Origin: Botryllus schlosseri
Lineage: Eukaryota
Assembly (NCBI GenBank): GCA_051294905.1
Contig: CM119384.1
Span: 24,180,001-24,244,000, forward strand
Direction of reading: 5' to 3'
DNA: 64,000 bases
Made by a program: the position numbers and the translations under genes. The notes under the pieces were generated by a model. It was not told the origin of the DNA. It saw nothing but the letters and a program-made list of their open reading frames with translations, and ran no database searches. Of the stretch, positions 8,881 to 64,000 are shown one piece after another (position 1 is the stretch's first letter; every line of letters starts with the position of its first letter).

Positions 8881-8881
8881 T

Positions 8882-11419: not shown

Positions 11420-12078
11420 TTTTTTTTACGGCTCCCTGTATCCGCCGGCGTTTGGCAGCCCTCTCTCAGAATAGGGCCCCTCTCGCTCGGGGTCTTTATT
11501 ACACATTTTGTTCATTTTTATGGTTTTTTAATTTTCTAACTCAGGGATTTTTCAACAGTTTATAAACATAATTTTTAACGGTTTCTTCTTGTTTTTTCTC
11601 TTGTTTGCGTATTCTTGTTTCTAAGATGGTGTGTACCTATTCTTGTTTCTAAGATGGTGTGTACCTGAGTACAACCAAATACTCCAATAGTAACGATTTT
11701 TGTTATTTTCCTGTTTCCGTTTACTGGTTAACAGCCAACCGCTGGAAGCGAGTGATTGGGGGGTTCTTTGTTGGCCCCTCCCCTCTTTCCTGAAGGGTTT
11801 TCCATCACTTTTATCCCTTTATCTTTCGTTGGGTTAGTCTAACTATCGTTTGGGACCCCTCTTCGGGGGCTGTTGTATTTTATTCTCATTTTTTTTCTTT
11901 GTTTTGCAAATTCCTGCCAATTTTATCATGTCGCTTCTAAGTATAGCTCTATTTTTTCAACCCATTTGTGTGTTTCGGGGTTCTGTGTTATTTTCTCAAG
12001 TCTCTTTTTCATTTTTTTGAGAGTATTTTTTTCAATGTTTTCACGGTCTACTCTTTCGTTGTTAATATCGAGCGATAT

Positions 12079-19000: not shown

Positions 19001-19403
19001 ATCCGACGATTTTTTTTGTAGGCTGCCGCAGCGAGCCTTAGAGTAGTCGAAAAGCATAAAATATAAAATATAAATATAAACAACGAAAAGACAATATATA
19101 TTTAGAGTCTTCCGTTCAAGATGTCACACAAAGTTTCGTCATTTATTCACATTGCATGAAATATTTCACACGAGATTCACATGAAAAATTGCATGAAATA
19201 CACATGAAATGCACATGAAATTTTCCTTGCTTTCCGTTGCAGCTTCTTTTCCGCTCTTTATCTTTGATTGTCGATACTTACTCTTTCATTCTCCGTTGGT
19301 CTTTCTCTTCGTTCCTTCTTGCGTTGTCAGGGTTTGTTTTCATCTTCGATGAAAGCAATTTCATTTTTGAAGATGATTTCTTCTATTGGTGAGTGAAAAT
19401 GAG

Positions 19404-22400
19404 TCAGTCTTTTTTTATTTTTCTCAATATCTTTCTGGTCGTCGTTTTGAGAGTTATTTTCGTGTTTGATAGTTTTACGTTATCTTTATCTAGGCCTAGT
19501 TTTGTTTGTATGACTTGTCTTTTTAGAATACTTAGTATTGTCCAATCGTTCCTGTTTAGGTTATCGTTATAAAATATTTGGTCTAATCCCAGCTTTTTCT
19601 GTTTGAATAAAAGTCTAAAATTACTTAACAACTCCTTGTCAAATGGACACTTCAGAAAGATGTGTTCTAGGTTATCATATCTGTTGTCACAAAATTTGCA
19701 GTTTGTGATGTTATTATTGTGAGAATCAATCCTCAACAGGTTTAACCTTCTCTTTTCCTCACTAAAGAAGTAGCCCTTGCAAGCCGTTCTTATGTTAATT
19801 ACTCTCTCTTCATTTTTTATTCTATTTACGTCTTCGTTTGCCATTTGCACTTTTTTCCAATTAACCATTACTCCATTACTTAGTCTAATTAGTGTTGTAG
19901 TTGCTTTTTTTTCTTTAAGTTTATTATGTATGTCCTTGTGTGTCGCTATTTTCCATTGGTCATCGTCCCATTCTATTTCTTTTACAGATTCCAAGATATC
20001 TCTCCATTCTGCGCTCATTCTGTTGCGCTCATTCTGTCCCTGTGTGGGATTGAATTGGAGTACAGTTTTTCATTAATGCTTTGGACTTTTGTGCCCAATA
20101 CATACAATGCTTCGTGATGCCAGAATTCACTGGGTGAGTCTATGTTTTTGATTATCTTGTATTTCTCTATTTTGCTCGCTTTAAGCTTACTTTCTACGCA
20201 TGGTATTTTTAGTTTGTGCATTAACTTTCTACGCATGGTATTTTTAGTTTGTGCATTATTTGTTCTGAGATTAAATGTGTTCGCCTAATTGGTTCGACTT
20301 TCTCTGGGTGCCAAATGAATTTGAAGAATATACTTTCTATTTCTTTGATATATTTTTTGGAGCGTCGATTATTCTCGCATTATAGACTAATTTGGATGTT
20401 GCGAGACTGTTAAGTATTATTGCTTTGCCAAACCATGTTAATTCTCTATCTTTGTACGCAATTGTGATTTTTCGAAGTTGTTCAATTCTCTTCTTCCAAG
20501 TTTTTTCTATATAACATTGGCCGAAAGATTGTCCTAAAATTTCTAATGATGTTTTGAGAATATTTTTGTATTTACTATTCGCGATTCTATTCGGATTCGT
20601 ACTTAGGATTTCTGATTTATCTTTGTTGAGGCGTTGCCCTGTGGCTTTGCCGAAATTCTCGAATTCTTCTATGACTTTGTCTATAGAGTGAATGTCTTTG
20701 ACTATAGCAGTCACATCATCAGCGTACTGCTGGATCTTGACTTCGCTGCTACCTAGTCTGATACCTTTGATTTCCTCATTTTTAACTATTCTTCTTGCGA
20801 GAGGATCTATTGTCAATGCATAAAGGCACATGCTTAATGGACATCCTTGTCGCAGTCCCCTGTCTACTTGTATCCTCTTCGTCATTCCACCATTTACTTC
20901 TACTTTACTATACGAGTTGTCGTATAGGTTTGCTATTAGTTTCAAGTTTCCTAATAGTTTTCGGTAACCCGTATTTCTCTAGAACTTGGTATAAGTACGC
21001 ATGAGGGACCTTGTCAAATGCCTTTTCCAAGTCCAAATTGAGAATGAAAAGGTCATTCTTTTTGTAGAGAGCAGTGTCTATCGCGGCTTTGACATTTCTT
21101 AACGCGTCGGATATCTGCCTATCTTTGATGCCACATTTTTGCGTATTTAGTACAATCGAATTGGTTACATTTTTAGGCGGTTAGCTAATATAGCTGTGAG
21201 AATTTTATGGTCTACATTTAATAAAGTTATGGGTCTCCAATTTTTGATATCTTGTGCATTTCCTTTGTATAACAATTTTACAATGCCCTTGTGCCACGAT
21301 TTACAGGTCGCTCCAAAGAATAAGGCATTATTGTAAAGCTCTAAAAGTTCCTGTTTCAAGACTGGCAAGGCCAGTACTTGATGTAGAACTCTTTAGTGAG
21401 TCCATCGCTTCCTGGAGTTTTGCCTGAGCTCATTTTTTTAAAGTACTTAGTATTTCTTCTTGAGTAACACTCATTTCTAAGCAATCTTGATCTTCTTTCG
21501 AAATATTGACCTCGTTTAGATCTTCTAGGTACATTTCTTTAAGATCGTAGTCCAAGTTTTTCTCTGCATCCCAAAGGTTTTTATAGAAATTTTGGATAAT
21601 CCTTTTGACCTCTTCAGGGCGTTCCTCAGTTTGTCCTTTCTCATCTATGATACTATGAATTTGTTTTTGTCTGTTTCTAGATTTCAGCCTGTCAAAGAAG
21701 TACTTTGTAGGCTTTTCACAGTTATCTTTGTCAACCAGCTTTGCTGTTTTGCAGAGGAAATTAAGTTTTTTACTCTCTTCTCTTTTCAGTTCTTTATGTA
21801 ATCTGATCTTTTCATAGCTATCCTGTTCTTTATTTATATCTCTTATTTTTGCCCTGATTAAGGCTTCTTTGTTTCTCTGGGGATTGTAGTATTGTGTTAC
21901 TCTCCTTATTTCAGTTTTTAAAACTGATTTAAGGTCATCTCACCATTGTGTGATTGATTCGTAATTGCCCTTATTTTTCTTCATCACATCAATTGTAGTT
22001 TTAATGTGATCATCGATCAAGGGCGAGTCTAGAACATTGATGTTGCATTTCCACGAACCTTTTCCATAATTGATTCGCGATTTATCCGATATTGTCAACT
22101 CCATCATATAGATGTGGTCAGATATCGGATTGTAGCTGTATTTACATTTAGAAACATCTTTTGCGACATCGTCTGTGGCGTATATGTTATCTATACGTCG
22201 TTCTTGTTTTCCTGTAATCTTGGTGTATATTTCCTTTTTAGAATTTCTCCAACGATTTACATCCTGATAAGAGTGATTTTCGATGAAATTTTTCCAAGTC
22301 TTTGCTGCTGGTGACAGATTGTATTTAGTCTTCACCTTACAGTCTTTGTCATTATTAATCAAATTAAAGTCTCCACAAATAACTGTTCTATTGGAAGTAT

Positions 22401-22858
22401 CATAGAGCGTCTCAGAAAGGTTTTTATAGAAGTCTGTCTGATATTTCCCAGGATTAGGAGGTGCATACACGTTCCATATCTCTAGGACATTTTCTTGACT
22501 TTTTAGCAAGATTGATTGAACTCTATGCTCTACTGTAGCGTTCCCAGTTATGCTCTACTGTAACGTTCCCAGTTATTTTGTATTTGTTTTCCATTTCAGA
22601 CTTAATCAGTATTAATGTTCCTAAATAGTATAGACGTTTGTGTTTTTCTCTGTTCACCCAGATTTCTTGTTTGTCCAGGCAGTTTTTGTATAGAATGTAT
22701 TTGTTATTTTTACACCAATCTTCAATTTTAGCTGTATTTATTTTATGAGATTCCTGAATGCATATTACATCGCTATTTTGTTTTTTAATTAGATTAGTAA
22801 GATTATTCCAGTTCCGGTCTATTCCGTTTGCATTTAGCGATGTTATTTTGATAGCCAT
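19404..22858 (-). pseudogene. TX-2 ORF2 (EN-RT), fragmented
   Basis: ITSLNANG, CIQESH, WNVYAP, ICGDFN, RRIDNIY, NWRPITLLNVDHKI, GLRQGCPLS, QYADD, CKFC..HIFLKC. Confidence 0.92.
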
Positions 22859-23172
22859 TATCGTTTTTTGGAGTGGCTTCTGCCCGGTTTGCTTTTCCTG
22901 CTTTTCTTTTTGGTCTTGCTTTGAGTTAGTGTGCTGCAATCCTGAGCCTGTTCCTCATCTATTTGCTCCCCTTCTGAGGAGACTGTCAGATCTGAATTTT
23001 CTGAGTCGTCAGTGAGCGTTTTCGCGCATGTCACCTTAGACTTTATTTCACCTTAGACTTTATTTTTGGGCTGTCCTCTTCGGAATCAGAACCCTGGGAC
23101 GAAATCTGTAAGTCCTCTGCTAGTTCATTTCGATTGTCAGTCTAATTTTGTTCATCTGTGACTTCAGTTTCT

Positions 23173-25008
23173 GGGTAATTTCCTGCCAAATGAGCAAATT
23201 TATTTTCAGATGAGCACCAAGGTCAATGGATGGCTACAAAATTTGGCACATTGATTCTTCTGTCATTATCATGAAAAAATCAAAAAATATTTTTCTCAAA
23301 TTCAACCTGATGACAAAGTTACACTCCTCACAAAACCATGCTTTTTGCATGTCACGCTCCAGTGATTTTCATCAAATCTGCAGTGAAACAGCAATATATT
23401 TTGCTGTGACAGTTAAATAACGCTGAAATTTGGTGGGAATCTCATTTGAAGTCTATATCATGTTACTGAGGCTTATTAGTAGGAGCTCCTCATTTTCCGA
23501 CAGCTTAAATTGAATGTGGTACATCCGAAAAGGGGAAAAAAAATTTACGGTCATTTTCATGAATTCGTGATTTTCAATATGCCTTCTACTTTGCTACAAA
23601 ATCTGAACAATTAATTTTCAAAATCTGAACAATTAATTTTCACGTTATCTGGTGGAAATGTGCCAATTTCTGATTACTGTGAATTTTTGGTATTTTCGAT
23701 TATGATGTCGTAAACCAAACAAGCTTAACAAACGGAATTCGCATAAAATGGTTATGTAGGCCTACTGTAAATGAATACATGCGATCCAATCCAAATTTCA
23801 CATGCCATGTGGTCTGGATTTACAGTTTCTGTATCATGAACCACACAAACTGAAAAACCACCAAAATTAATAGAAAATGTTCTCGTAATATACTTGAATG
23901 AAAATGCAATAGTTTTTCATACAAAAGCATCTTAATTGCCCAATCCATGCAAAATCTTCATTTTTTTTAAATGTTGTCTTCATATACTTTCTACTGCCTG
24001 CCACTATAGCATTTGAATGCATGTCAATGCAAAGAAGTAGGGTACCGGTATGTGAGAAAACAGGTCATAACAGATATATCTTTTCTTGCTGGCCAATGAA
24101 ATGAACCTGATGGACCGTCTGAATGCAGGAATTTGATTTTGGCATCACAATGCTCCTTATTTACGTCCAACACCATTCCAATTCACCATTTCCTATCATA
24201 TAAGCACACTTATCAAGCTGGTTTTCACGTTAAAATTCAATTTGTGTCAAATTTCTTCATCTTTCATCACCTTTGTAACTATGACATTCAAAATCAGTTA
24301 TTTATCTACTGCAATTGAGACAATGAAGTCACTCACTCACTGAAATTGGACTATAGTTACTCAGTCACAGCTATACTGTAATTCCCAGGGCTAGTTAACT
24401 TCATTCAGCCACCTTCAACATAGGATGCATTGTGACATCACAATGAACAATGACCTAAAGGTCTGAATTCCATTGTTATTATAATCCATTATTCCTTTGG
24501 AGTTTTTTACTGGTGTAGTTGGAAATTAATGGATTGAATCTTTATTAAATGTAAGACAATATATTCAAGATCACTACTTCAGAATCTTGGTTTCTAAAAT
24601 TTTTCCCCTTTTTATTTATGGGAGTTTGAACTTTCGGCACCAAAACGAGCAGTAGGAGTCTCATGTGACATTTTTTTGTATGATAACATACTCTGAAATG
24701 TTTGGGCCATCAATTTAAGAATTCCTGGAGACCTGTAGCATCATGTCCCCAAATTCCAGCCACATTAACGGCTTTTTACCTTCAAAATAATGACATTGAA
24801 AAAATAATTGACAATGTTCAATGAAGCGTGACAAGGAAAATGTTCAAACTTTGAAGCCTCATAACTTGGTACTTTTTTAGAATTTTCTAAAAAAAAATTG
24901 AAAAATTGGATTTGGCATATCTAAAGCTATATCAATCAGTGTGCCAAATTTCATATAAATTCTCCAACCTTGGTGCAACCCCCTTGTTGATTTGGCAAGA
25001 AATTACCC
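23173..25008. mobile_element. Non-autonomous cut-and-paste transposon with GGG..CCC ends and 4-bp TSD (Sola2-like, tentative), inserted in TX-2 ORF1
   Basis: TIR GGGTAATTTC(C/T)TGCCAAAT (18/19) plus subterminal GCACCAAGG and AAATTTGGCACA; TSD TTCT at 23169-23172 and 25009-25012; no coding remnant seen. Confidence 0.8.
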
Positions 25009-25761
25009 TTCTTCATTTACGGTAATATCTGCTATTTCACTGCAATCGACTTCCTTGGTTAAATTCGGGAACTCCTCGTTCCTTATAGGACAGTCGATCA
25101 TGCTGTGCTTTTGTGAATCACAGTATTGGCAGCGTTTCGCCGTGCATTTTGACGCGATATGCCCGGTCTGCCCACATTCGTAACATTTTCTGGTATTATT
25201 TTTAGGCGCAGTTGGCAAGAAGATTTTACACCTGGCTCCGTCTACCGTGATGAATTGAGGAAGGATACCTTTCACGCAAACTTCGTAGACCAGATGCCTG
25301 AAGCCATTTTCAAAATTTGTGTTTTTATGGTACCCTCTTGTGATTTTCAATAGGGTTCCTGCGTTCCAGGTTTGTATTGCGTTCGCTAGCGATTCGCAAG
25401 TTGTTTCTGTTGGCACGGCTCTAACGCTTATGTATGTAAGCGGTGCTCTTGGCTTTCTTATTTCATATCTTTTACCTTGGTGAGTCACTTCCTGAATGTT
25501 TTGAACCAGGTCATTACGTTGGCTGTGTTCTTGCATTGTAATGCTGAAAACGTTCAGCGATATTTGAAACATAGATTGTATCTCATTTTTCCATTCTTTC
25601 AGATCCTTCTGCAAGTATATCAGGTCCAGAACCTCTTCCGGACTGATCTGATCTTGTGCGATCAGATCGAATGAACGCGGTCTGTTCCCATGGGAGATGT
25701 ATTTATTCATTATTCTGTATTCCTGTTTAAGCACACAGCTTATTCTTTGCACTTCAAGCAC
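25009..25761 (-). pseudogene. TX-2 ORF1 N-terminal part with two CCHC zinc knuckles
   Basis: RPRSFD, ISVRAVPTE, NGFRH, CYECGQTGHIASKC, CQYCDSQKHSMIDC. Confidence 0.9.
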
Positions 25762-27210: not shown

Positions 27211-27238
27211 CTGAAAATAGCCGTTAGTCGATACTCAC
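27211..27238 (-). promoter_or_regulatory. Micro-intron-like motif at LINE 5' tips (also 11374-11398, 27011-27033, 32678-32702, 51498-51520, 60955-60981)
   Basis: GTGAGTATCGACTAACGGCTATTTTCAG: donor, CTAAC branch and pyrimidine-CAG acceptor within 28 nt; function is inferred, not shown. Confidence 0.5.
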
Positions 27239-27250
27239 GTGTGGTTGCAA

Positions 27251-27688: not shown

Positions 27689-27798
27689 TTTTTTTTTAGG
27701 GGTAACCTGGAGGAACCGCAGTAAACCTCCACCCCGTGGTATTTCACCAAGTTACTTTCCCACAAGCGCCTTTATAGGTCACTCTTGGGTCCAAAGTA
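27689..27798 (-). mobile_element. S2: about 100-nt shortened variant of the S element
   Basis: Same 3' end; 10-bp TSD CCGATGCTTA at 27679-27688 and 27799-27808. Confidence 0.75.
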
Positions 27799-51463: not shown

Positions 51464-52060
51464 GCCACAGCGGCAAATCCACAGCTAGGTTTTAAATCTG
51501 AAAGAATATCTAAAAGACACCTGCCTCGACAAGAGATGATATTTTTTTTTTTTTATATGGCTCTCCGTAATCGCTGCCTTTCAGCGGCCCTCTCTTAGTT
51601 TAGGGTCGCCTCCGGGTCAGGATCTTGATTACACATTTTTGTTATTTTTTGGGTTTTTTTTTTTTGGGTTTTCTAAATAAAGTGTTTGAAATGTTTTCGA
51701 ACATAAATAAAACGGTTTCTTCTTTATAGTTTACTCTATTTTTACTTCAGTGGTTACGGTGCATTGCTCTGCTTGCTAGTCATTGGGGGGTAGGTTTGCT
51801 TGTACCTTAGTGCAACCAAACCCTCCAATGTTTGATATTGGTGTTATCAATATTCTTGTTTTATTTTCGTTTACCGGTCAGAAGCTTTCTGCCGGTCGCG
51901 AGTGGTTCAGAGGTTTTGTAGGCCCCTCCCCTCTCGCTCGAGGGCTTTTTTCCACTTTTTTTTCCTTTTAATTTTGGTTGGGGTTATCATTCTTTCGTTT
52001 GAGCCCCTATTTTAGGGGGTGTTATGCCCTCTTCGTATTTGTTGTCTTGTTCACGTATTT

Positions 52061-55000
52061 TTAGGTTAAGCTGTCTATTTTGCCGAGTACCGTGCCTGTG
52101 TGTGAGTCAGCCTCGATTCGTCTGACTCGTCTTTGAATTTTGGTGATTATCTTTTTTGTTATATTTTCGTCTGCGACTTTTCTGTTTTCTATGTCTAATG
52201 CTATTTTAAAGTTTATGATTGATTTTTTATATATAGACAGAATCGTCCAGTCTGTTTTCCTGTTTCCAATGTTATATAGGATGTTGTCGGCATTCAGCTT
52301 CCTCCCCACGATGTTTTCTAGCTGGGTTAAGATTTTTCTCGTATAATTGCATGATGTGAGAATATGTATCACATCATCATCATATCCGTTGCAGAATTTG
52401 CATCTTAGATCTAAGGTTACTCCTGTGTTGGAGTGTGTTATATTTCGGCTTCTTTTTTTATTTCCGAAGATATACGCGTTGTGTGCTGTTTTATAGTTAA
52501 TGATCGATTCCTCATTTGTAATGGTTTTGTGGGTACCATATTTGGTTTGATTTATTTTATTCCAATTGATTTTATCCCCCCTTCCGGTTCTGCTTTCTGG
52601 ATGGTTTTCCTTTAGGCTTTTGATTGCCTTGTATAAGGATTTATGAGTGGCGTCTTGGCACTCTTCTTCATCGAGATCTATTTTTTTCCAGATGTCGATG
52701 CTATCAGTCCAGTTTTTTGGGGTTGGGTATCTATGTGGTTCACTATTTTTGTATAGTGTGTCATTGATTCCTTTTATTTTCGTTCCAATTTCGTATATTG
52801 CGTGTTGGTGCCATAATTCCGTTGGTTCGTCAAGTTTTTTCAGTTTTAGAATTTTTTCAATTTCACATGCTTTATTCCGCGATTCTACGTCAGGTATGTC
52901 GTAGCCTCCTTTATCTTTCTCTGCTATGAGCGTCTTTCTTCGAATAGATTCCATTTTTTGTGGATTCCATAAGAAGTTGAAGTATAGTTTTTCGACTCGT
53001 TTTTGCTGATCTTTTTGCATGGGGATTACTCTGGCGTTATAGATAATTTGGCTTGAGGCGATCGAATTTAGAATAGTTTTTTTCCCTATCCAGGACAGTT
53101 TTCTGTGTTTGTAGGCTTGGAGTACTCTCTTTATTTTCATAATTCTCATGTCCCATGTTTCGTTAGTTTGGTTTATTCCATAGTGTTGTCCGAGTATTTT
53201 AATGCTCGGTTTTGTAAGTTCTTGATATCTGGTTTTTTGGGTTGGGATACTCCGTTTCGGTTTAATGTGCAAAATTTCTGTTTTTTGTGCATTGAGTTTT
53301 TGGCCCGTTGCACGTTCGCATCTTTCGAATTCCTGGAATATAAGGTCGATGTCCTTTTCACGCGTTAGATAACAGGTCAGGTCATCCGCGTATTGCTGGA
53401 TTTTCATTTTAAAGCCTCCTATTCTAAAAGCCTCGGTGTTCGGGTTTTTTTCTATAAGCCTAGCCAGGGGGTCGCTGCAGATGGCGTATAGGCTCATGCT
53501 GAGCGGACATCCCTGTCGTATGCCCCTTCCCAGTTTAATTTTATTGGTCAGTGCTCCATTAACTAAGATCCTGCTGCTCGCTTCGCTGTAGATCTTTTTT
53601 ATTAATTTAGTGAAGTGGGAGGGCAGGTCATATCCTGCTAAGATCTTGTGCAGGTATTGGTGGTTGATTTTGTCAAACGCTTTCTCCTGGTCGAGGTTGA
53701 CGACCAGGAGTTCCTTGTCTCTCTCTCGCGCGTATTTTATTGCAGCATGGGTATTTCTCAGCACGTCTGTTATGTCTCTTCCTTTTATGCCGCATTTCTG
53801 CGTTCCGTTAATGATGTTCGGAAGTATTGAGGTTAGTCTTGCTGATAGGATTGCAGTTAATATTTTATAATCGGTATTCAGTAAGGTAATAGGCCTCCAG
53901 TTTTTTAATTCCTGGGGGCTACCTTTTTTATATACCATGGTGGTAACTCCGTCCGACCATGTTTGACATATGCCTCCAAAGAGGTATGCGTTGTTTAATA
54001 CCTCTTGGAGGTCACTTTTTATCAGGTTGTAATAGGCAACGTAAAATTCCTTGGCTAGACCATCTGGTCCGGGTGTCTTACCGTTGTCCATTTTCTGTAT
54101 TATGATTTTGATTTCGTCTTCCGTTATAGGGGTTTTAAGATCTTCCCGCTGGTCGGGGGTGATCTTGATGTCTTTAACCGTGTCAAGGTATCTATTTTGT
54201 AAATCTGGGTTTGCGTTTTTTGATTCGCTCCACAGATCTGTGTAGAATTTTTCCACCGTGTGTAGAATCTCTTCTTTGGTGGTGATTTCTGCACCGTGTT
54301 CGTTTACTATAGAGCTGAAGATTTTGCTTTCTCTTCGCTGCTGTAGTTTTTGAAAAAAGTACCTTGTAGGTTTTTCATTTTCCTCAATGTCTTTTATTTT
54401 GTGAAGTTGGCATTGATGCCGTATCTCTTCATCTTCGAGCCTTTTCAGTTCTTTTAGGGCGTCGATTGGGTTCTCGTCCGGGTTTTGTTCATTTTGTATG
54501 CGACTTACTTTTTCTTGAAGCGCTTTTATTTTGTTTTCGTTTGCAGCTTTCTTTTGCCAGCTATGGCTCTTAAGCTGTTTTTTCATTTCTTTTTTGAGGT
54601 GGTCCCACCATTGGTACACGTCGTTGAAGAAGCATTTCTGCTCAGTGCACTTTTGGTGGGTTTCCTCGATTTTGTTGTACAGCTCCTCATCCTGGAGGTG
54701 TCTGGCGTCGTTTTTCCAGAAGCCTTGTCCCCATTTGATGTTATTTGGTATTATGATTTGGATTTGCTGCATGAATATATGATCGGAGATGGTGTTTAGT
54801 TTATATGTCGTACTCTTTACTCTTGCGAGGAGACGTTCCGATAGGTATATTCGATCAATTCGCCTTGATTGTAGTGCCTTCATTATGGTATATAGTTTTT
54901 TAGTTGGGTTTCGCCAACGCCATACGTCTCTTATTTTGTAGGCTTCTACGAAGTTTTTCCATATTTTGGCGGCAGGCGTCAGTTTAAAATTCACGGTGTT

Positions 55001-55513
55001 TTTTGAATCTATCTTTTCTGTGACGATATTAAAATCTCCACAGATGATCGCACTCTCCGGGTTATTTTTTTCTATGTGACTTATCAGGTCTTGGTAGAAT
55101 TCAGTTTGGTATCTTCCAACATCGCTGGGCCCATATACATTGTATAGGGTGGCGATGTCGTTTGTGTCCTTTTCAGTTAAGCGTAGCGTCTGTGCCCTAT
55201 CCCGTCGCAGTATCGAGTGGTCAATGTTGTACTTTGTTTCCAATTCCTTTTTGACGAACATTGCCGTACCTCTGTAGTAGTGTTTTTTATTTTCTTCCTG
55301 GTCAATCCAGTTTTGGCCTATGTTTATGTGATTTGAAAAGTATAATACGTCGTTTTGTTGTGCCCATGTTTCAATTTTCCTTATGTCCATTCTGTGTGTC
55401 TCTTGGACGCATATTATGTTCCAGTTCTTTTCCTTTCTGAATAAGTTTTTCATTTTGGGCCAATGTGTTTGCATTCCATTGGCGTTCAGAGATATAGCAT
55501 TGATCGCCATCAA
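52061..55513 (-). CDS. TX-6 ORF2: intact 1150-aa APE endonuclease / reverse transcriptase
   Basis: ISLNANG, CVQETH, YNVYGP, ICGDFN, SRRIDRIY, SDH, KTPGPDG, GIRQGCPLS, QYADD, CKFC..HILTSC. Confidence 0.96.
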   Translation of the reverse strand: MMAINAISLNANGMQTHWPKMKNLFRKEKNWNIICVQETHRMDIRKIETWAQQNDVLYFSNHINIGQNWIDQEENKKHYYRGTAMFVKKELETKYNIDHSILRRDRAQTLRLTEKDTNDIATLYNVYGPSDVGRYQTEFYQDLISHIEKNNPESAIICGDFNIVTEKIDSKNTVNFKLTPAAKIWKNFVEAYKIRDVWRWRNPTKKLYTIMKALQSRRIDRIYLSERLLARVKSTTYKLNTISDHIFMQQIQIIIPNNIKWGQGFWKNDARHLQDEELYNKIEETHQKCTEQKCFFNDVYQWWDHLKKEMKKQLKSHSWQKKAANENKIKALQEKVSRIQNEQNPDENPIDALKELKRLEDEEIRHQCQLHKIKDIEENEKPTRYFFQKLQQRRESKIFSSIVNEHGAEITTKEEILHTVEKFYTDLWSESKNANPDLQNRYLDTVKDIKITPDQREDLKTPITEDEIKIIIQKMDNGKTPGPDGLAKEFYVAYYNLIKSDLQEVLNNAYLFGGICQTWSDGVTTMVYKKGSPQELKNWRPITLLNTDYKILTAILSARLTSILPNIINGTQKCGIKGRDITDVLRNTHAAIKYARERDKELLVVNLDQEKAFDKINHQYLHKILAGYDLPSHFTKLIKKIYSEASSRILVNGALTNKIKLGRGIRQGCPLSMSLYAICSDPLARLIEKNPNTEAFRIGGFKMKIQQYADDLTCYLTREKDIDLIFQEFERCERATGQKLNAQKTEILHIKPKRSIPTQKTRYQELTKPSIKILGQHYGINQTNETWDMRIMKIKRVLQAYKHRKLSWIGKKTILNSIASSQIIYNARVIPMQKDQQKRVEKLYFNFLWNPQKMESIRRKTLIAEKDKGGYDIPDVESRNKACEIEKILKLKKLDEPTELWHQHAIYEIGTKIKGINDTLYKNSEPHRYPTPKNWTDSIDIWKKIDLDEEECQDATHKSLYKAIKSLKENHPESRTGRGDKINWNKINQTKYGTHKTITNEESIINYKTAHNAYIFGNKKRSRNITHSNTGVTLDLRCKFCNGYDDDVIHILTSCNYTRKILTQLENIVGRKLNADNILYNIGNRKTDWTILSIYKKSIINFKIALDIENRKVADENITKKIITKIQRRVRRIEADSHTGTVLGKIDSLT

Positions 55514-56029
55514 GATTGGATAGGATAGGACACAGGGTTATTATTTTTTGGCTTTTCTTCTTTGGCCTTTTGGTTTGTCGGTAGGACTTTGCTCATCCCT
55601 GTTTCTTTTGTTCGGTGAGCGGGCACTAAAGAATTCTGACGCTGTGAATGTGCGGTTTTCGAATTTTTTCCTTAATATCGAGGTCGATCCGCTTGCCGGC
55701 GGATTGGTGTTGTCTATCTGGGATCTCGCCTCGTCTTCGCTTGTGACTAGGACTAAGGGTGGGTTTCAAAAAGTTGTCTTAATTTAGACCTGGCTTAAGG
55801 CCAGTGATTGACTTGCTCAAGACGCCAGACGTCGGCGGTCTTAATTCGGTTTCAAATGTCAATTTGGCGCCGCGCTCGGCCAAGTCCGTTAGTTGCGAGT
55901 AATTACTGTCTACTTCGTCGCTGTAGCGAGTTCAACACGGAACCGAGGCCAGTTGTTATTGTTTTGAGTTGCTTGCTGATGTCGTATAGTATGGTAGCGA
56001 TGCAGTGAAGGAATACGGAATTGCTTGAG

Positions 56030-56530
56030 TTGTTGAAATTTACGGACGGATGATCAGAACGGAACCCTGAGGAAGTATCTGGCAAATGATCAGCACGTTA
56101 TCGCAAAGTATTCGAAGAAATAGTGCGGCTGTGATACCGATTTTTGAAGACACAACTGCCCAGCATTTTTGCATATTAATTGATGAAGATTATGCTCTTG
56201 GAGATGCTGAATATCCACTGAGGACTTATTACTCACGCCACTATTATGCCCAAGAACTTTGACCGAAAAAAGTCACTATTGTTTTCATGCATATCGTTAC
56301 CCTCTGGCTGAGCGCAGTGCTTTGTGTTGAAGAAAATATCTCGCGCATTGGCTATATTCATGGAAGAACCTCAGAATATCGATATGACAATAGCCTGCTT
56401 CTGCCTTTACAATCATAGCAATGCTGACAAGGCAGACGGAGCTGAATTTGATGACATACTGCAACTGGAAGCGTTGACCGCACTCCCACAGTATCGACTC
56501 CTACAGAGAAATCTGCACGACAACGCATGA
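56030..56530 (+). pseudogene. Harbinger (HARBI1-like) DDE transposase C-terminal remnant
   Basis: LGDAEYPL (LGDxAYPL motif), AERSALC.LKKISRAL (ERAFG.LK.RF-like), IACFCLYNH (ACCVLHN-like). Confidence 0.65.
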
Positions 56531-57029
56531 TCTAGAGATTTTTGCAATACATTTGATTACATTCCAAAACATACTCGTGCTTTATTTCTTGTGACACGTT
56601 AAAATGAGGTAAAATGTGCATTATGGCTTTAAGTAAGTTCAAGTTCATAAATTTGGACACAAGATAGCGAAGCTATTGCAAGGGGCTTGGGAAACTGGAG
56701 CAGGCGAACATGAACGGCTGAACAAAATTGAATCAAATGTACAAAAGACATGTTTTGACTCTAGATTCGGCTAGCGTCAAATTAATGTTGTTCAGCATCT
56801 TCTAAATTATTAACGTTGAGACCATGCTCAACTTGTTTCATTCTCTTCTGCTTTATCACTGATTTTCAAATCTTCGCTGCTTCATAGTTGACTTCGGGCC
56901 TGGACTTCGGTGAGCTGTTGGTAGAGATATAACTAATAAATTTCGAACGAATTTTTTAAATTTTATACTGTTGCTATCCATACAAAACTCAATAGTCTAT
57001 TGTAATACATAGCATCAGCAAACTATACG

Positions 57030-57110
57030 AATGTTAATAGCAATAATAATGAGATAATAATTAATAGCAATAATAATGAGATAATAATTAATAGCAATAA
57101 TAATGAGATA
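57030..57110. repeat. 28-bp tandem repeat, about 3 copies
   Basis: TAATAGCAATAATAATGAGATAATAATT repeated. Confidence 0.85.
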
Positions 57111-60100
57111 ACAAACAGACAATTGATGGCCTAGTAATGAATGCAAACTTACCTTGATCTGGTTGGAAATGTTGCCCAAACAACTAGCAGATGCAGCTCC
57201 CAACTGCTACTCCATAAGTTGGCACATCAGATGGGTCAGCATCTATCACAAAACAACTTATCAAGCATGGTATAAATATGAATGGAAATGACATACTTAC
57301 AGCCCAGTGTTGGTATCATGGTGCGAGGAACTGGATAAAGCTCGAGCAAAGTGCTTTCAGAAAAACCTTAATATAAAAGGAACTGGATATTGGTATGCGC
57401 ATTCACACCCACATATACGGATAGATAGATAAATACCTATTTGATGGCTTGGCACATCACTGCTCGTTTGATTTTCTCTGTGTTCCAAAAGAATGGTGCT
57501 ATCATTTGTTTCACAGCCTGCAGCTCACTCTGGTGGCACATTGCACAGCTATATAATAATTTTTACATGGACTGATCATGCTGCTATGTCGATACTATGA
57601 CTGGGTAGCAAATCTGTGAAAATCAATGTTGAATTGACATATATCTCAAAACATTTGGATTACTGAAGCGTTAGCATGTACTGCACTTTGAATATTATTG
57701 GCATATATCACTTCACATCAATGGCCCCTTTAAGCTGCATACATGCGCAAATGCGCAGTGCTGACACGGTTTATGCACACAGAAAATCTGAAGTCATGAC
57801 CCTTTTTTAGTCGTTACGCACTGTTTTCCGAGGGTCTGCGTAGTGAGTTCTTGAATGTACGCACAGACTTGTCAAAAATTAGAGGGAACATTGCTTCACA
57901 TCTATAGCAATTCACTAACAACTTCATGCAAAGTCATGTCATTTTTCTTTCCGAAACTTCTGGATCTTTATCCAGTATGCTGAAATTCGGTGCGCGTGCA
58001 GTGAACGGAATATCAATACAATGCTGGTTGAATAGACACATATTGATCAAAGTTCTATGTAGTCGGCACTACTCTAGAAAGTAGCAGTTAAACATATTTA
58101 TGACAATGCTCATAGGGGTGGAGCGAAAATGGATATTGAGGGGAACCCTGCAATCAATCACAGTTGCGTGCAAGTGGTGCAACATTGATTAGGCTCAACA
58201 AAATGAGCATGATACATATTTTCCATTTTCTGGTGATGCGTCATGTGTTCACTTTTTGGCTATAACCACAGCAAAGCCAAACTGTCAAAACGTCAACGTG
58301 CCTAAGTTAAAAGACGTAACCAGTCGAGAAAACTATAATGATGAGTTGACGTAGCATGTAGGCTATCAATAAAGGATCTGTTGATCTGCCGCAACCTAAA
58401 ATCTCATCTTGGGGCTTCTTCGATACATGCACTATATTAACTGATGTTCCCCATGACCACTGATCAGCATCATTACCCGTAGCGGATTCTTATCGCTGAC
58501 CTTTCTTTGCCAAAATGGGCGGGATTCACAAGTCCAACGCTAGGCACCTTTACGCCTTACCCCAAATATCACTTCCCGTGTCTCGTAACCATAGTCATAT
58601 CATATTCGTAACCGAATCGATTGGAGCCAGCGAACGCGGGTTATGGTGGTCATGGGGAACATTGCTTGATACTATATGGTGCGGTTATGGAAGAAGTGCT
58701 GATGTGTCCTGTGTGCCTCAGGGCTCTGGCTATCCATTTGAATTGAAATCCGTTCAGTATACGAAGACCCCTGCAGCATTCCACTGTAAATCCCACTATA
58801 ACGGTATATGATACCAACTTGTCACGTTTGTGATATAAACATTGTTCCAAACTGCCTGACATCAATATAAAATGATCTAATCTGATTTGCCAAGCTATAC
58901 ATCAGAAGAACGGCCAGTATCCTTCAACAAACAGCACAACAGTTATCAGCACTGTTGACTTCAGCCTACCCCCTAGCTGGCTTGGATATCTGTCTTAACA
59001 AAGCGCACGCTGGAGGGGAAATCCCCTCAAGTCACAGTTTTGAAACCGACTTCAGCCTGAGGGGTGTAGCTTAAGCCCGACGACGGGCCTAAGTCGACTA
59101 TTTGAAACCCACCCTAAGTCCCCGTCGTTTGTACTTTCACTGCTAGTTTCGTTTTCCGTTTCTTGTACTATTGTCGTGTCTAATTCGGTCTTTTCAGGTG
59201 TATCGCCAAGTTCGGCGATTTCCCTAAATAGATCTATCACGTCATTTTCTTCTTGTTTTTCTTCGTCTATTTGTTGTTCGTTGGTGTTTTGTTCTGCGCT
59301 TTCCGCTTGTTTCAATGTTTCTTGGTTGTTGGCGCTTATTCGTACGAATTGTGTCAGGGGGATGGCGTCTCTCTCCCCTGCTTGAGTCTGTTGTGTTTGT
59401 GGTAGCACATCAGATCTCTCTTTTCTCAATATAGCCTCTGGCTCATATTGCAGGAGTCTTCTTGCATTTGAGTTATTATTTGTGTTGTTTTCTGTGGTGT
59501 CATTTGGTATTGTCTGCTGTTTTGGGTCCTCGTTCATGTTTTTTGGGCAATTAATTTTTTTATGTCCGTATTCCTTGCATATCAAGCATGCCGTTTGGTT
59601 CGGGCAGTCTTTGGAGCCGTGCCCAGGATGGAGACACCTATAGCACATTTGATTTGTTGTGTCTTCTTCCGGAAGGTATGTTTTACAAGGGGCCTTGCCC
59701 AGATAGACAAAAGGCGGGATTCTGCCCGGTGTATAGTTCTCGATCGAAATCTGTCTGTATCCGTTGAGTATATTTGTACCGCGGTGGTATATCAGGGTGA
59801 TTTCCCTGATAGTACCACATTGGTAGCTTGTGAATTTTTTCCTGATTTCAGCTTCTTCGACTTCAGTCGGGACTGCTCTGATATTTACCTTGACTGTAGG
59901 AAGTCTAGGTTGCTCAATGTGGATTTTCCCTTTATCTGTGGTAATTCCGTTGTGTATTGCGTCTAAGAAGATCGTTTTCAATCTTTCCACCGGTGCTTCG
60001 GTTGGAAAGGTAAGATTGTAGGTATTCCTGCCTATTTGGAATAGGAAAGGATATTATCTTTGTGTTCCACCAGTTTTGGATGCGTTCTTACTGCCTCGAT

Positions 60101-60989
60101 GACCTCTGTAGCTGTGATATCTGTTGGGGTGAGTAAGTCCAAGGATCTTGGCCTGAGGCCGTAGGTGACCCTTGTGTTGTTCCTGCCTTGCAATGCATGC
60201 GAGTATGCCATGGCTATTGTAAGAAGGTGTTGGTTTCTGTTTGAAACTAGACAGCTGCTGGCGTCTAGTTCCTGTATCTTGTTTCCAGATGTGTGTATTT
60301 GCGGCGTAAGTTCGTGCTATGCTGTGTAGCTGTGGCTTTACTGCTCTGCACTATGAATGCCGCTATCGGTTTGTTGTTCTCTGTAGTCTATATACTGCTA
60401 CGCTGCTGTGAAGCGCGTTGTTTAGCGATGCTTTTAGAAGCTTTCTGACGCGTTTTTAAAGGCGTTTCTACGCGCTTGTTACACCGATACTACAGTTTCG
60501 CTTGCTGTACGAGCACCGTCTAGACGGTGTCGTAGCGCTTAAGTAATTTAGTTAGGAGAGCCAGACAGTCTCTCGACGTCTCGAACGAGACGCGCGTGAG
60601 AGGAGAAGGTAGTAGGCAGAGAGACTTGACTCAAGAGAGAGTCAAGTCTCTAAAGAAAAGACTCGACGAGTCCTGACTCGAGAGAGAGAGTCAAGACTCG
60701 AAGAGGTAGAGAAAAGACTCACCAAGACTCGACTCACTAAGACGAGTCAAGTCCCGGGGAGGTAGAGGTTTTTGAGTCAAAAGGTGACTCGAAGTGGAAT
60801 TTCGGCGACGAAAAGAAGGAGAGGAAGTAAGTACGATAAGCCTATGTAAGTCAGAAAAAATAACTAGTTATTACGGTTAGAAAAAATAACTAGTTATTAC
60901 GGTTAGGGTAAGTCTAGACTACTGCCACAGCGGCACCGGATCTCCTTGTTGCACCTGAAATAGCCGTTAGTTCATACTTACGCGTGATA

Positions 60990-61408
60990 TTTTTTTTTTT
61001 TTTTTTTTTAGGGGTAACCTGGTGGAACCGCAGTAAACCACCACCCCGTTACGCTTGCGGCAGCCCATGTGGCACTACACCACCGGACTATTGCCACAAG
61101 CGCCTTTATAGGTCACTCTTGGGTAGAAGTACCCGAGAGCTCCCTTAAGGTTGCTTCTTCGTTTGTTTCCTTCAAAGTTTTCTCTGCTTTTTAGGTGCAA
61201 ACGGCTGTCACAAGCAGGCTTTGGCTGGGGGCGTCTGCGGAGGCTTGTCCCGCCGCCACCATACTTGTGACTGGGATACTGGCCAGTCAAGCTGACGAGA
61301 TCCCGGGTTGGAATATGAAGGCCAAGGGCCATACTCTTCCAAGGTGTACAAGTGATTGGAAGTATCGGTTGTACCACAAGGGTTTCGCATCAGCCAGGCC
61401 GATGCTTA
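60990..61408 (-). mobile_element. S3: second full copy of the structured non-autonomous S element (about 399 nt + tail)
   Basis: Colinear with S1 over its whole length; T-run 60990-61009. Confidence 0.75.
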
Positions 61409-64000
61409 TTTTTTTTTTCGGTCGCCGCAGCGATCCCAATTTTATTCCAGAAAGAATTTCAATACAAATAAAAGGAAATTAGCCTATATATATATATATC
61501 TATTTCAGACACACTTCACCATTCAGAAAATTCTCAGACACAGAATAATCATTCACGCACACATTCGTACCATACCATTCACACAATTGAAATTCTTCCG
61601 GTCCAGGATCTTCTTTTCATCTCGTCGGTCATCGTCAGTCCAGTGTTCATTGAATCGCCCATCCGTTCGTCCATCCGTCCGTCGTCCATCCGTCATCAGT
61701 CTTTCGTTTGTAGTGTTTCGATATTTTTGTTCAATTGGTTCCCGTTTCATCAGTCCGTATTCTATTCATGTCATTGTCATTGATTCTCTTCTGTATTATA
61801 TGTCGAATTTATAATTATAGCTCTGCTTCTCTTCTTTTTTTATATTTAATTCACATTTGCATCACTAACTTCCATGGTTATTCGGTCGTATTTAACGGTT
61901 GACTAGGCTGGAGGCATGATTTCGCTTATGATTGTTCTCTACACAATCGAGACAATCGGCGAAGTCGTATCGCATTATTTCGCGTGTCTGGGACAATGCA
62001 GATTTCCACTTTGCGACAATCGGCGTTATTGGTCTAATTTTACTCGTAATTTCTACAATTTTAATCCAAAATCTATTTTAAGGTTATTTTATTTTTGTTC
62101 TAATCGTGGTCTATCATTTGACCTAATTTTTATTGAAAAATTCCAAGATTAGATTTTTGAGTACCGGTACTGGCACTCTGTCTAATCCGTCTGTAGCCAT
62201 TGCTACCAAATCTGGCTGTTTCCCTAAAATCTATTCATCTTCTTCAATCAGGAACGCTAATTCGTTCCTGAATAGAGTTTCTTCATTCAAATTATCAAAT
62301 TTCTGTACTCTTTTAAGAATTTTCTTCAAAATTTTGTCGACTACTTCTCGAAAGGCCAAATTATAGTTTGTTATTTTCTGGTTGATTTTGTCAAGGCCAA
62401 ATTTTCTCTGCATTATTTCTGATTTGATTATAGTTATTACTGCCCAATCTGTTCTGTTTGTATTATTGTAGTTATAAAATATTGCATCTTTTGTTAATTT
62501 TCTATTCTTCATCAGTCCTTTGAGTTTGTCAAAGATGCTTTTTGCAAAGCGACATTTGAAGAATATATGCTCAAGATTATCCTCTCTATGGCCACAGAAT
62601 TTGCAATCTGTGATTGCCAATCTTTGTGACCCTATATTAAGTATATTCATTCGTCTGATTTCTTCTCCCAAGAAATATCCCTTGACTGCCACTCTTAGGT
62701 TCAGGATTCTTTCCTTATTTGTTAAAGGATTCTTCTTTCTGTTATCTATCGTTATTTTATCCCAGTCTACCTTTTCTCCTGTGTCCAGGGTTAATTCTGG
62801 GAGCACTGGAGTATTTTTGCATCTTATTCTATCACACATATCTTTGTGTTCTGCTTCTTGCCATTCCTGCTTGCTCCATTCAAGCCTTTCCGCTGTATTC
62901 AATATGTTTTTCCACCCCTTTGTAACTATGTCACTATGAGGCGATGAATTGTTGTACAACTTCTCGTTTATTTTCTTGAGCTTTGAGCCAAGGATATAAA
63001 TGGCCTCGTGATGCCAAAACTCCTTTGGCTCTGTCAAGTTCGTTATTATTTTGTATTCCTCTATTTTGCATGCCTCAATCTTGCTCTTGATGCATGTTAT
63101 TTTTAGTTTCCCCATTCGCTCTCTGGAGAGCAAATGCTTTCTCTTTATTGCCTCAATTTTCTCTGGGGCCCAGAGAAACTTGAATAGAAGTGATTCCATT
63201 TGTTTTTTGATCTTTTCAGGTACTTCAACTATCCTGGCGTTGTGGATAATCTTCGATGCTGCCAGGCTGTTTATAATGACCGCTTTGCCATACCAGGTGA
63301 GTTTTCTGTTTTGATAAGTATGTGTAATTTTTTTGATTTGTTCTAATCGCTTGTTCCATGTTAGCTTTATATAATTTTTCCCAAATTTTTGACCTAAAAT
63401 TTCTACAGTTGGCAAGACGTATTGTTTAAGTTCTTCTTTTTGAATTGGCTTGGTGGTTAGGATTTCCGTTTTCTTCTTATTAGTTATTTGTCCCGTCGCT
63501 TTCGCAAAGCAATCTAGGTCCTCGAAGACTGTATTTACAGATTTTTCATCTTTTACAATGGCCGTCAAATCATCAGCGTATTGCTGTAGGCGCAATTCTT
63601 CCTTGCCTATTTTTATTCCTCTTATGTTTTGATTCGCCATGATCTTCCTGGCTAGCGGATCCGCTGCCATGGCATACAAACACATACTGAGGGGGCATCC
63701 TTGTCGGAGCCCCCTAGTTATTGATATTTTATTTGTCAGGCTTCCGTTGACTTGTACTTTACTATACGACTGGTCATACAGTTTTTTTATAAGTCTTCGT
63801 ATTTCATACGGAATACCATAAGATTCCAATATCTTATGAAGGTATCCGTGATGGACCCTATCAAAGGCCTTTTCTTGGTCTATGGATAATACAATCAGTT
63901 CCGATTCCTTCCTGTAGGCTTGATCTAGAGCTGCTTTTATATTTCTTAGTGCATCGGATATCTGTCTGTTTTGGATTCCACATTTTTGCGTATTTAATAT
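61409..64000 (-). mobile_element. TX-7: group-B Tx1/L1 LINE, 3' part (continues beyond the window)
   Basis: T-run 61409-61418; 3' end GCCGCAGCGA shared with TX-2; open RT C-terminal ORF. Confidence 0.9.
62231..64000 (-). CDS. TX-7 ORF2 C-terminal half, open to the window edge
   Basis: DQEKAFD, GLRQGCPLS, QYADD, CKFC..HIFFKC, RNELAFLIEE. Confidence 0.9.
   Translation of the reverse strand: MLNTQKCGIQNRQISDALRNIKAALDQAYRKESELIVLSIDQEKAFDRVHHGYLHKILESYGIPYEIRRLIKKLYDQSYSKVQVNGSLTNKISITRGLRQGCPLSMCLYAMAADPLARKIMANQNIRGIKIGKEELRLQQYADDLTAIVKDEKSVNTVFEDLDCFAKATGQITNKKKTEILTTKPIQKEELKQYVLPTVEILGQKFGKNYIKLTWNKRLEQIKKITHTYQNRKLTWYGKAVIINSLAASKIIHNARIVEVPEKIKKQMESLLFKFLWAPEKIEAIKRKHLLSRERMGKLKITCIKSKIEACKIEEYKIITNLTEPKEFWHHEAIYILGSKLKKINEKLYNNSSPHSDIVTKGWKNILNTAERLEWSKQEWQEAEHKDMCDRIRCKNTPVLPELTLDTGEKVDWDKITIDNRKKNPLTNKERILNLRVAVKGYFLGEEIRRMNILNIGSQRLAITDCKFCGHREDNLEHIFFKCRFAKSIFDKLKGLMKNRKLTKDAIFYNYNNTNRTDWAVITIIKSEIMQRKFGLDKINQKITNYNLAFREVVDKILKKILKRVQKFDNLNEETLFRNELAFLIEEDE

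What the first reader, a model, noticed from the sequence alone, without database searches (positions are those of the whole stretch)
11420..64000. Head-to-tail array of divergent Tx1/L1 LINEs that grows at the poly(A)/5'-tip junction
Seen: all ten poly(A)-tailed units are on the - strand, and nine of ten tails (T-runs at 11420, 27251, 27689, 27809, 32713, 37673, 51542, 60990, 61409) abut the 5' tip of the neighbour with no spacer. Three insertions keep duplications of exactly the neighbour's tip: TX-4 CGTGCGACC (32704/37664), S2 CCGATGCTTA (27679/27799), TX-6 TGATA (51537/60985; short, so weaker). At least three LINE lineages and a non-autonomous RNA use the same junction. Known: self-nesting or head-to-tail LINE arrays exist (Chlorella Zepp, Giardia GilM/GilT, Drosophila HeT-A/TART), and Tx1-clade endonucleases are often site-specific for multicopy RNA genes or microsatellites. 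Inference: a multi-lineage safe-harbour array in which each element supplies the landing pad for the next, possibly subtelomeric or centromeric.
Basis: partly seen in the sequence, partly recalled or inferred. Interest (0 to 1): 0.88.

Follow-up and report, generated by a model that had tools for sequence, protein, structure and literature searches.

The report
Jumping-gene train built on spliced-leader landing pads
A 60-kb one-way train of ten diverged jumping genes and three short riders is real, and it forms because each full-length copy carries a copy of the sea squirt's spliced-leader gene boundary, the spot where the next copy cuts in.

Summary
All ten poly(A) tails are on the minus strand at the stated coordinates. 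Nine abut a neighbour's 5' tip directly, and the tenth (19009) abuts a 5'-truncated unit.

Stand-alone copies of the same families elsewhere in this genome start about 25 nt earlier, with the published chordate spliced-leader (SL) exon followed by G|T. Array copies start exactly at that T. The array continues past the window and ends at C14:24251785 with one SL exon.

About a third of exact SL-type heads genome-wide (about 26 of 75) have a poly(A) at that same nucleotide. The same families also hit a look-alike site, GG|TGAGCATCG, in a MITE-like repeat. That site has no A-run, gives 11-12 bp duplications, and an empty copy is on hand.

The elements form one clade of APE+RT LINEs nearest Xenopus Tx1. 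The best reading is therefore a target-specific Tx1-like radiation, plus an SL-headed SINE, that homes to the SL exon/intron boundary and regenerates the site.

Of the three claimed duplications, S2's is supported, TX-4's is plausible and TX-6's is inherited. The locus is 1.45 Mb from the chromosome end, so it is not telomeric.

This scan had already flagged SL-targeting LINEs on other DNA of this genome.

The parts
10997..11420 (-). B0: 5'-UTR fragment of a B-lineage LINE. Its tip (A)TAGCATCTCTTGC.. directly follows the TX-1 tail. It is the oldest visible unit and is interrupted further down by plus-strand sequence.
   Evidence: homology to B-type heads in L020, L023, L038
11421..19008 (-). 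TX-1: lineage A LINE, tail 11421-11428, ORF2 11947-15386 in 7 pieces with 6 stops, ORF1 about 15947-16612. Its 5' end lacks about 180 nt.
19009..27250 (-). U2: B-related LINE, tail A8 at 19009-19016 (the 'tenth tail'), ORF2 19410-22861 (broken), ORF1 25006-25761, A-type tip TTGCAACCACACGTGAGTAT.
27251..27688 (-). S1: SL-headed SINE-like unit without its SL exon, tip TAAGCATCGG, tail 27251-27272.
27689..27808 (-). S2: 5'-truncated S (matches S 293-416), flanked by a 10-bp duplication TAAGCATCGG, tail 27689-27697.
27809..32712 (-). TX-3: lineage A LINE, tail 27809-27817, ORF2 27987-31110 (4 frameshifts), ORF1 about 31734-32285, tip GGTCGCACGGGTGAGTAT.
   Evidence: A contig from an independent sample bridges 27737-27928.
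32713..37672 (-). TX-4: third LINE lineage (about 36-38% aa identity to A), tail 32713-32728, flanked by the 9-bp repeat GGTCGCACG.
37673..51541 (-). B1: lineage B LINE, tail 37673-37686, ORF2 39031-42130 plus its N-terminus at 46329-46514, ORF1 46508-47683, tip TATCATCTCTTG. It is swollen by two hAT-like inserts.
51542..60989 (-). TX-6: lineage A LINE, tail 51542-51554, uninterrupted 1150-aa ORF2 at 52061-55513, ORF1 59052-59990 clipped by a TIR element, tip TATCACGCGTAAGTAT.
60990..61408 (-). S3: S unit without its SL exon, tail 60990-61009.
61409..64000 (-). B2: lineage B LINE, tail 61409-61418. It continues to L061:3043, has an uninterrupted ORF2 (62294 to L061:1683) and tip TATTGGTAGTGGCAGG. 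Upstream lies U10 (L061:3044-7785), which carries the array's single SL exon cap at L061:7762-7786.
51804..51828 (-). SL-exon look-alike plus GT in the lineage A 3' UTR, about 250 nt before the tail. It also occurs at 11663-11687 (TX-1) and 32905-32929 (TX-4).
27053..27077 (-). Degenerate SL-exon relic inside the U2 5' UTR, followed by a B-type head. A similar relic lies at 47756-47780 in B1 and at L061:2815-2839 in B2.

Best explanation
This is an array of target-specific, Tx1-like (APE endonuclease + RT) non-LTR retrotransposons of three diverged lineages, plus a SINE with a spliced-leader-RNA head. They home to the boundary between the spliced-leader exon and its intron.

Proposed steps:
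1. The endonuclease nicks the bottom strand opposite ..TTAAGG|TAAGCATCG.., one base into the intron. This is inferred from junctions.
2. The poly(A) RNA is reverse transcribed from that nick. This follows from established TPRT.
3. The top strand is cut about 10-12 nt downstream. This is shown by the 10-12 bp duplications.
4. Full-length RNAs begin at SL position +1 and carry SL exon + G + a few intron-derived bases. That is what co-transcription from an occupied SL gene would give (inferred).
5. At the 5' junction the cDNA end pairs with the target's own exon, or with the short duplicated tip. The join is then seamless and only the 5'-most unit keeps an exon. The structure is shown; the pairing step is inferred.

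Because every full-length insertion brings a new copy of the site, and the poly(A)|tip junction stays cuttable, arrays grow both at their cap and at internal junctions, always in one orientation.
For: (1) The leader ATTGGAGTATTTGGTTGTATTAAG equals the published chordate SL exon (PMC3795323 Table 1).

(2) Stand-alone S, A-lineage and B-lineage copies start with this exon followed by G|T. The exon begins at or within 1-3 nt of SL position +1 and ordinary duplications lie directly outside it.

(3) Array copies start exactly at the T.

(4) The window's array ends upstream with one exon at L061:7762-7786. A three-S array at C16 has one exon and one duplication around the whole array.

(5) Genome-wide, 75 exact heads split into about 47 with the exon and about 26 with poly(A) at the same nucleotide; the reversed-pattern control gave 4.

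(6) The MITE-like repeat site GG|TGAGCATCGTT has no A-run. It was hit by S, by B-type and A-type elements and by 6 of 24 young A-lineage 3' ends, with 7-12 bp duplications, and an empty site is on hand.

(7) Of young A 3' ends, 8 of 24 are followed by TRAGCATC. Of B2-type 3' ends, at least 5 of 10 are followed by S or A tips, and 3 more lie in a 5,686-bp tandem.

(8) All window LINEs form one clade (SH-aLRT 99) apart from rat and plant L1. The top Swiss-Prot structural match is Xenopus Tx1.

(9) The uninterrupted ORF2s are internal and the 5'-most unit is decayed.
Against: Specificity is not strict. About 40% of sampled S copies sit at ordinary A-rich sites with normal duplications. 16 of 24 young A-lineage 3' ends are not followed by TRAGCATC, and none of the 24 is followed by an A-type or B-type tip.

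A- and B-type tips resemble TAAGCATC only loosely, so hits on them may owe more to the poly(A) or to microhomology than to sequence recognition.

The SL-exon look-alikes in lineage A 3' UTRs are unoccupied in all 5 copies seen, so the exon alone is not sufficient.

No promoter-bearing SL gene occupied by a master copy was identified. No nicking biochemistry exists. My locus sample was chosen by S bodies and A 5' ends, which inflates junction rates for the LINE tails found incidentally.
Confidence: 0.74

Rival explanations
1. Plain L1-style insertion into older poly(A) tails. The endonuclease only likes T-runs, so tails of resident elements are hit in the same orientation. Duplications are A(n) plus a few bases of whatever follows. 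No sequence-specific recognition of the SL boundary is involved.
For: Stand-alone S copies have duplications that start in A-runs. TX-1 is a 5'-truncated copy sitting right after a tail. Junctions are reused although the exon is gone. Two thirds of young A-lineage tails are not at TRAGCATC.
Against: The MITE-like D site has no A-run, yet at least 10 insertions from three or more families hit it at one nucleotide. Exon-bearing virgin heads (TTAAGG|T) have only two A's there, yet about 26 heads are occupied at exactly that base. This model does not explain why array copies all lack exactly exon+G.
Confidence: 0.13
2. The SL exons at 5' ends come from SL trans-splicing of element mRNAs, as with SL-capped retrocopies in dinoflagellates. 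The arrays would then arise by some unrelated route.
For: The exon starts at SL +1 in stand-alone copies. One locus has stacked partial leaders (L049). An earlier scan note (s1-253985) proposed this reading.
Against: After ..AAG nearly every head keeps GT, the first intron bases. S keeps at least 12 nt shared with SL-gene-like loci (GTAAGCATCGGC), which a spliced product would lack. Poly(A)|T junctions offer no AG acceptor.
Confidence: 0.06
3. The array is a product of segmental duplication, unequal crossing-over, or a mis-assembly of repeats.
For: The region is repeat-dense. Short-read contigs are fragmentary here. Some neighbouring copies are near-identical (TX-6 and the copy 20 kb upstream share 98% aa identity).
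Against: Units are from different lineages at 63-70% DNA identity and show no higher-order period. The same junction types recur at more than 25 loci on many chromosomes. A contig from an independent sample bridges the 27809 junction. The chromosome-scale contig has no N in the window.
Confidence: 0.03

Closest known systems
Target-specific Tx1-clade LINEs and their snRNA-headed SINEs: Tx1L in Tx1D, Keno in U2 snRNA genes, Tx1-Mar with SINEU in Mariner-N4_AMi (PMC4494074)
   Same: APE+RT LINEs with a poly(A) tail and a preference for a multicopy small-RNA gene or a transposon. Small-RNA-gene-derived heads occur on both LINEs and partner SINEs, and heads are added recurrently. Copies are flanked by other copies at one target, and there is a second target inside a DNA transposon.
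   Different: The target here is the spliced-leader gene's exon/intron boundary. I found no such target reported for this clade in the searched library. Because the head itself carries the target, insertion regenerates the site and long multi-lineage arrays build up.
SL-gene-specific retrotransposons SLACS/CZAR/CRE (trypanosomatids) and NeSL-1 (nematodes) (PMC4640811)
   Same: Non-LTR retrotransposons that home to spliced-leader genes.
   Different: Those elements encode a restriction-like endonuclease and insert inside the SL exon. These encode an N-terminal APE nuclease, cut one base past the exon, and belong to the L1/Tx1 group. The shared target is therefore convergent.
Head-to-tail LINE arrays: Drosophila HeT-A/TART, Chlorella Zepp, Giardia GilM/GilT
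   Same: One-orientation, poly(A)-to-5'-end arrays of non-LTR elements.
   Different: Those arrays are at chromosome ends or nest within themselves. This array is internal, 1.45 Mb from the end and flanked by other DNA. It mixes three lineages plus a SINE, and it is explained by a specific internal target.
L1/Alu insertion into A-rich tails of older retroposons (my own knowledge)
   Same: Tails are reused as targets in the same orientation.
   Different: That process has no fixed nucleotide position, no shared leader and no A-run-free second target.

Membership tests
Tx1 clade (L1 group) non-LTR retrotransposons | ORF2 with an N-terminal APE-type endonuclease, RT, and a C-terminal Cys/His motif; ORF1 with a zinc knuckle | tested here: met
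   Pfam Exo_endo_phos + RVT_1 and zf-CCHC ORF1s. Nearly invariant C1038, C1041, H1050, C1055. Model pLDDT 86.
Tx1 clade (L1 group) non-LTR retrotransposons | RT phylogeny places the element inside Tx1 rather than L1 proper | tested here: inconclusive
   The top Swiss-Prot fold hit is Xenopus Tx1 (2e-62), only slightly ahead of mammalian L1 ORF2 (1e-57). The tree puts the ascidian clade with a zebrafish pol-like protein (BAC82613) and apart from rat, lizard and plant L1 (97-100 SH-aLRT). No labelled Tx1 reference set (Repbase/RTclass1) was available.
Tx1 clade (L1 group) non-LTR retrotransposons | Target preference: more than 20% of flanks of one sequence type (criterion in PMC4494074) | tested here: met
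   8 of 24 A-lineage tails are followed by TRAGCATC. At least 5 of 10 B2-type tails are followed by S or A tips. About 26 of 75 exact heads are occupied.
SL-specific CRE/NeSL retrotransposons | Restriction-like endonuclease C-terminal of RT, and insertion within the SL exon | tested here: not met
   The nuclease is an N-terminal APE. The junction lies one base after the exon, at AAGG|T.
Telomeric retrotransposon arrays (HeT-A/TART type) | The array forms the chromosome end | tested here: not met
   The window is at 24.18-24.24 Mb of a 25,698,374-bp contig. The array is capped by non-repeat flank at L061:7787.
snRNA/SL-RNA-headed SINE (SINEU-like) | Head derived from a small nuclear RNA gene, a poly(A) tail, duplications, and a target shared with a Tx1 partner | tested here: met
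   The S head is the SL exon plus GTAAGCATCGGC. There are at least 188 candidate copies. Duplications and shared targets are seen.
snRNA/SL-RNA-headed SINE (SINEU-like) | 3' tail shared with the partner LINE | tested here: not met
   The S tail (..CCAGGTTACCCCT) differs from the A (..GAGCCGTAT) and B (..GCGGCGACCG) tails. The partner is unknown, or recognition is by poly(A) alone.

The most novel reading that the evidence does not exclude
Homing may be partly guided by the element's own RNA. Every full-length RNA carries the SL exon at its 5' end, and lineage A (including the 36-38%-identical TX-4) conserves a second SL-exon look-alike in its 3' UTR while the surrounding UTR has diverged. These copies could pair with the exon strand of the target to position the complex and seal the 5' junction. 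That would make a LINE clade whose target recognition is shared between a loose nuclease and RNA-DNA homology, and which has become independent of host SL genes by carrying its own landing pad.
Probability: 0.12. Interest if true: 0.85.

Novelty: new variant of a known kind. Interest (0 to 1): 0.6.

Why it matters
Target-specific LINEs are natural models for safe, site-directed gene insertion. If this reading holds, it adds four things:
- an APE-type (Tx1-like) clade in a chordate that homes to the spliced-leader gene boundary, a convergence with the unrelated SL-specific elements of trypanosomes and nematodes;
- a clear case in which the target travels with the element, so that insertion breeds new targets and multi-lineage arrays;
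- a SINE built on an SL RNA head;
- a DNA-transposon site that mimics the target.

It also explains why SL-like sequences are scattered through this genome, which matters for annotating true SL genes and trans-spliced 5' ends in tunicates.

Tried and rejected
- Rfam and tRNA scans of the window found nothing. Rfam on the D-repeat loci gave only sub-threshold hairpin hits.
- I tried to fetch more genomic copies chosen by LINE 3' ends.
- Testing the TX-4 duplication through sister copies failed because the 5' end is single-copy.
- Reads were laid on 27000-32900. Logan contigs are short, only one junction (27809) is clearly bridged by an independent sample, and RNA coverage there is negligible. 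This neither proves nor disproves the other junctions.
- DNA for the closest foreign homologues (P0001, P0003) was not available, so conservation of SL targeting in other species is untested.
- I looked for a short genuine SL gene variant (..GGCCGAG stem). Only two copies exist, one intact and one occupied. The promoter-bearing SL genes were not identified.
- A strict model of growth only at the 5' cap is rejected, because the 5'-most unit is decayed while internal units have open ORF2s.
- A telomeric or centromeric location is rejected or untested, respectively.
Full report
**What is there**

The window has no N. From 11.4 kb to its end, every reverse-transcriptase, APE-endonuclease and zinc-knuckle ORF lies on the minus strand, and every internal DNA similarity is direct.

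The one at 11421 has only 8 T. A tenth tail, A8 at 19009-19016, was located.

Read on the minus strand, the window holds these units:
- B0 (fragment, 10997-11420)
- TX-1 (11421-19008)
- U2 (19009-27250)
- S1 (27251-27688)
- S2 (27689-27808)
- TX-3 (27809-32712)
- TX-4 (32713-37672)
- B1 (37673-51541)
- TX-6 (51542-60989)
- S3 (60990-61408)
- B2 (61409 onward)

There are three LINE lineages: A (TX-1, TX-3, TX-6), B (U2, B1, B2) and TX-4. ORF2 identity between lineages is only 36-45%. S is a ~420-nt non-coding unit with at least 188 candidate copies in the 495-Mb, 16-chromosome genome.

**What the tips are**

I fetched 30 genomic S copies and 30 loci matching the TX-6 5' end. Stand-alone copies of S, of lineage A and of lineage B start about 25 nt further 5' than the array copies. 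They begin with (G)ATTGGAGTATTTGGTTGTATTAAG, followed by G and then the tip (TAAGCATCGG.., TATCACGCG.., TATCGCATCTC..). Ordinary target duplications lie directly outside this leader.

The leader is identical to the chordate spliced-leader exon consensus published in PMC3795323, Table 1.

Array copies begin exactly at the T after ..AAGG, preceded by the neighbour's poly(A). After the exon almost every head keeps GT. S shares GTAAGCATCGGC with SL-gene-like loci. The heads are therefore SL-gene sequence and not the product of trans-splicing.

**The array has one cap**

I extended the window by 30 kb. B2 ends at L061:3043 against the tail of a further B-type unit, U10. U10 begins at L061:7785 with a perfect SL exon and non-repeat flank. 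The array therefore has ten LINEs and three S units over about 60 kb, with a single exon at its 5' end.

A three-S array on C16 shows the same logic on a small scale: one exon, and one 10-bp duplication around the whole array. A second array, 9 kb further on, starts with a copy 98% identical to TX-6. That copy is capped by an exon and its tail abuts TAAGCATCGGCCGAG...

**Is the site specific?**

Four lines of evidence bear on this.

1. Of 75 exact matches to [exon end or A-run] + TAAGCATCG, about 47 carry the exon and about 26 carry poly(A) at the very same nucleotide. The reversed-pattern control gave 4.

2. A MITE-like repeat contains ..CCAAATTTGG|TGAGCATCGTTTC.., which has no A-run. S copies, a B-type element, an A-type element and 6 of 24 young lineage-A tails are inserted at that bar. 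They have 7-12 bp duplications (mostly TGAGCATCGTT(T)), and an empty site is present in L024. The shared letters are GG|TRAGCATCG.

3. Of 24 exact lineage-A 3' ends, 8 are followed by TRAGCATC. Of 10 B2-type 3' ends, 4 are followed by S tips and 1 by an A tip, and 3 lie in a 5,686-bp head-to-tail tandem on an unplaced contig.

4. Specificity is not absolute. About 40% of sampled S copies lie at ordinary sites. 16 of 24 lineage-A tails are not at TRAGCATC, and none of these 24 is at an A-type or B-type tip.

By the 20% criterion used for Tx1 families (PMC4494074) these families count as target-specific.

**How the array grows**

The duplications at the D site and around S2 place the second cut about 10-12 nt downstream.

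A full-length RNA starts with exon + G + tip. The cDNA end can therefore pair with the target's own exon at a virgin head, or with the duplicated tip at a poly(A)|tip junction. Either gives a seamless join that leaves no second exon. This step is inferred, but it accounts for three things: the absence of spacers, the single cap, and TX-6 carrying TATCA where B1's tip also reads TATCA.

Internal junctions are reused:
- TX-6 and B2 are the only units with uninterrupted ORF2s, and both are internal, whereas the cap unit U10 has frameshifts and a stop.
- TX-1 is a copy lacking about 180 nt of its 5' end, sitting directly after U2's tail.
- S2 is a 5'-truncated S with a 10-bp duplication.

- S2's is supported.
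- TX-4's 9-bp GGTCGCACG is plausible. It cannot be tested because the family's 5' end is single-copy.
- TX-6's TATCA is part of the family head, since its sibling has it after an exon with a different 3' flank.

**Family placement**

- ORF2 has APE + RT + a C-terminal Cys/His motif.
- The AlphaFold model (pLDDT 86) matches Xenopus Tx1 best, narrowly ahead of mammalian L1 ORF2, and far ahead of jockey, R1, R2 and SLACS.
- In a tree, all nine local LINEs plus two Logan-derived proteins form one clade (SH-aLRT 99). Broken copies were read through with X at breaks. The clade sits in a group with a zebrafish pol-like protein (BAC82613) and apart from rat, lizard and plant L1.

Membership of the Tx1 clade is therefore likely but not proven.

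**Position and reality**

The window lies 1.45 Mb from the end of a 25.7-Mb chromosome, so it is not telomeric.

Full-length A 5' ends are concentrated in the terminal 10% of chromosomes (70% observed against 20% expected). However, the hits are clustered and so are not independent. Half of the occupied exact heads lie on C14 between 17 and 24.3 Mb.

A contig from an independent sample bridges the 27809 junction. The other junctions were not resolved by the short contigs.

**Literature**

Searches found Tx1-clade targeting of U2, microsatellites and DNA transposons, and snRNA-headed SINEs. SL targeting appeared only for restriction-like-endonuclease elements. Nothing was found on Tx1-type SL targeting in tunicates. 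Repbase reports are not in that library.

This scan had already flagged SL-targeting LINEs elsewhere in this genome.

Noticed in passing
window 11663-11687, 32905-32929, 51804-51828 (minus strand); also L062:6978-7002: Lineage A 3' UTRs, including the distant TX-4, conserve an SL-exon look-alike plus GT (..TTGGAGKRTTTGGTTGYAMTMAGG|TA..) about 190-270 nt before the tail, while the flanking UTR has diverged. TX-3 lacks it. None of the five copies is occupied by an insertion.
   Followed up: partly
window 27053-27077, 47756-47780; L061:2815-2839 (minus strand): Degenerate SL-exon relics lie inside the 5' UTRs of U2, B1 and B2, about 175-205 nt behind the current tip in U2 and B2 and just upstream of ORF1 in B1. 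In U2 the relic is followed by a B-type head. This suggests heads have been stacked repeatedly.
   Followed up: partly
window 55745-59126: A ~3.4-kb insert with 37-nt terminal inverted repeats (84% complementary) splits TX-6 between ORF1 and ORF2 and clips the ORF1 end. It holds a 3 x 27-nt tandem repeat at 57034-57114.
   Followed up: partly
window 43350-44975 and 48222-50075 (minus strand): Two paralogous ORFs (541 and 617 aa, 35% identical) lie inside B1. One has a weak hAT dimerisation-domain hit. Both are in the same orientation as the LINEs.
   Followed up: no
window 1-10990 (plus strand): A run of plus-strand ORFs, one with an integrase core domain (5297-6088), interrupts the oldest B-type unit. 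No long terminal repeats were found within the window.
   Followed up: partly
loci L020, L022, L024, L027, L058: A MITE-like foldback repeat carries GG|TGAGCATCGTTT in each arm. It acts as a second, A-run-free target for S, A and B elements.
   Followed up: yes
G000:C205:5-11394: An unplaced contig has three B2-type 3' ends spaced exactly 5,686 bp apart. This looks like a homogeneous head-to-tail tandem of one family.
   Followed up: no
L063:2839-2875 (upstream of the second array's exon cap): The flank reads like the 3' part of a tRNA (..GGTTCGATTCCAACC..) directly before the SL exon of the TX-6 sibling copy.
   Followed up: no
L038 (C14:24058209-24061476) versus window 60990-64000: The same order of units (B-type tail, S, (S), A-type tip) recurs 120 kb away in the opposite orientation. 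It could be an independent build-up or an old inverted duplication.
   Followed up: no
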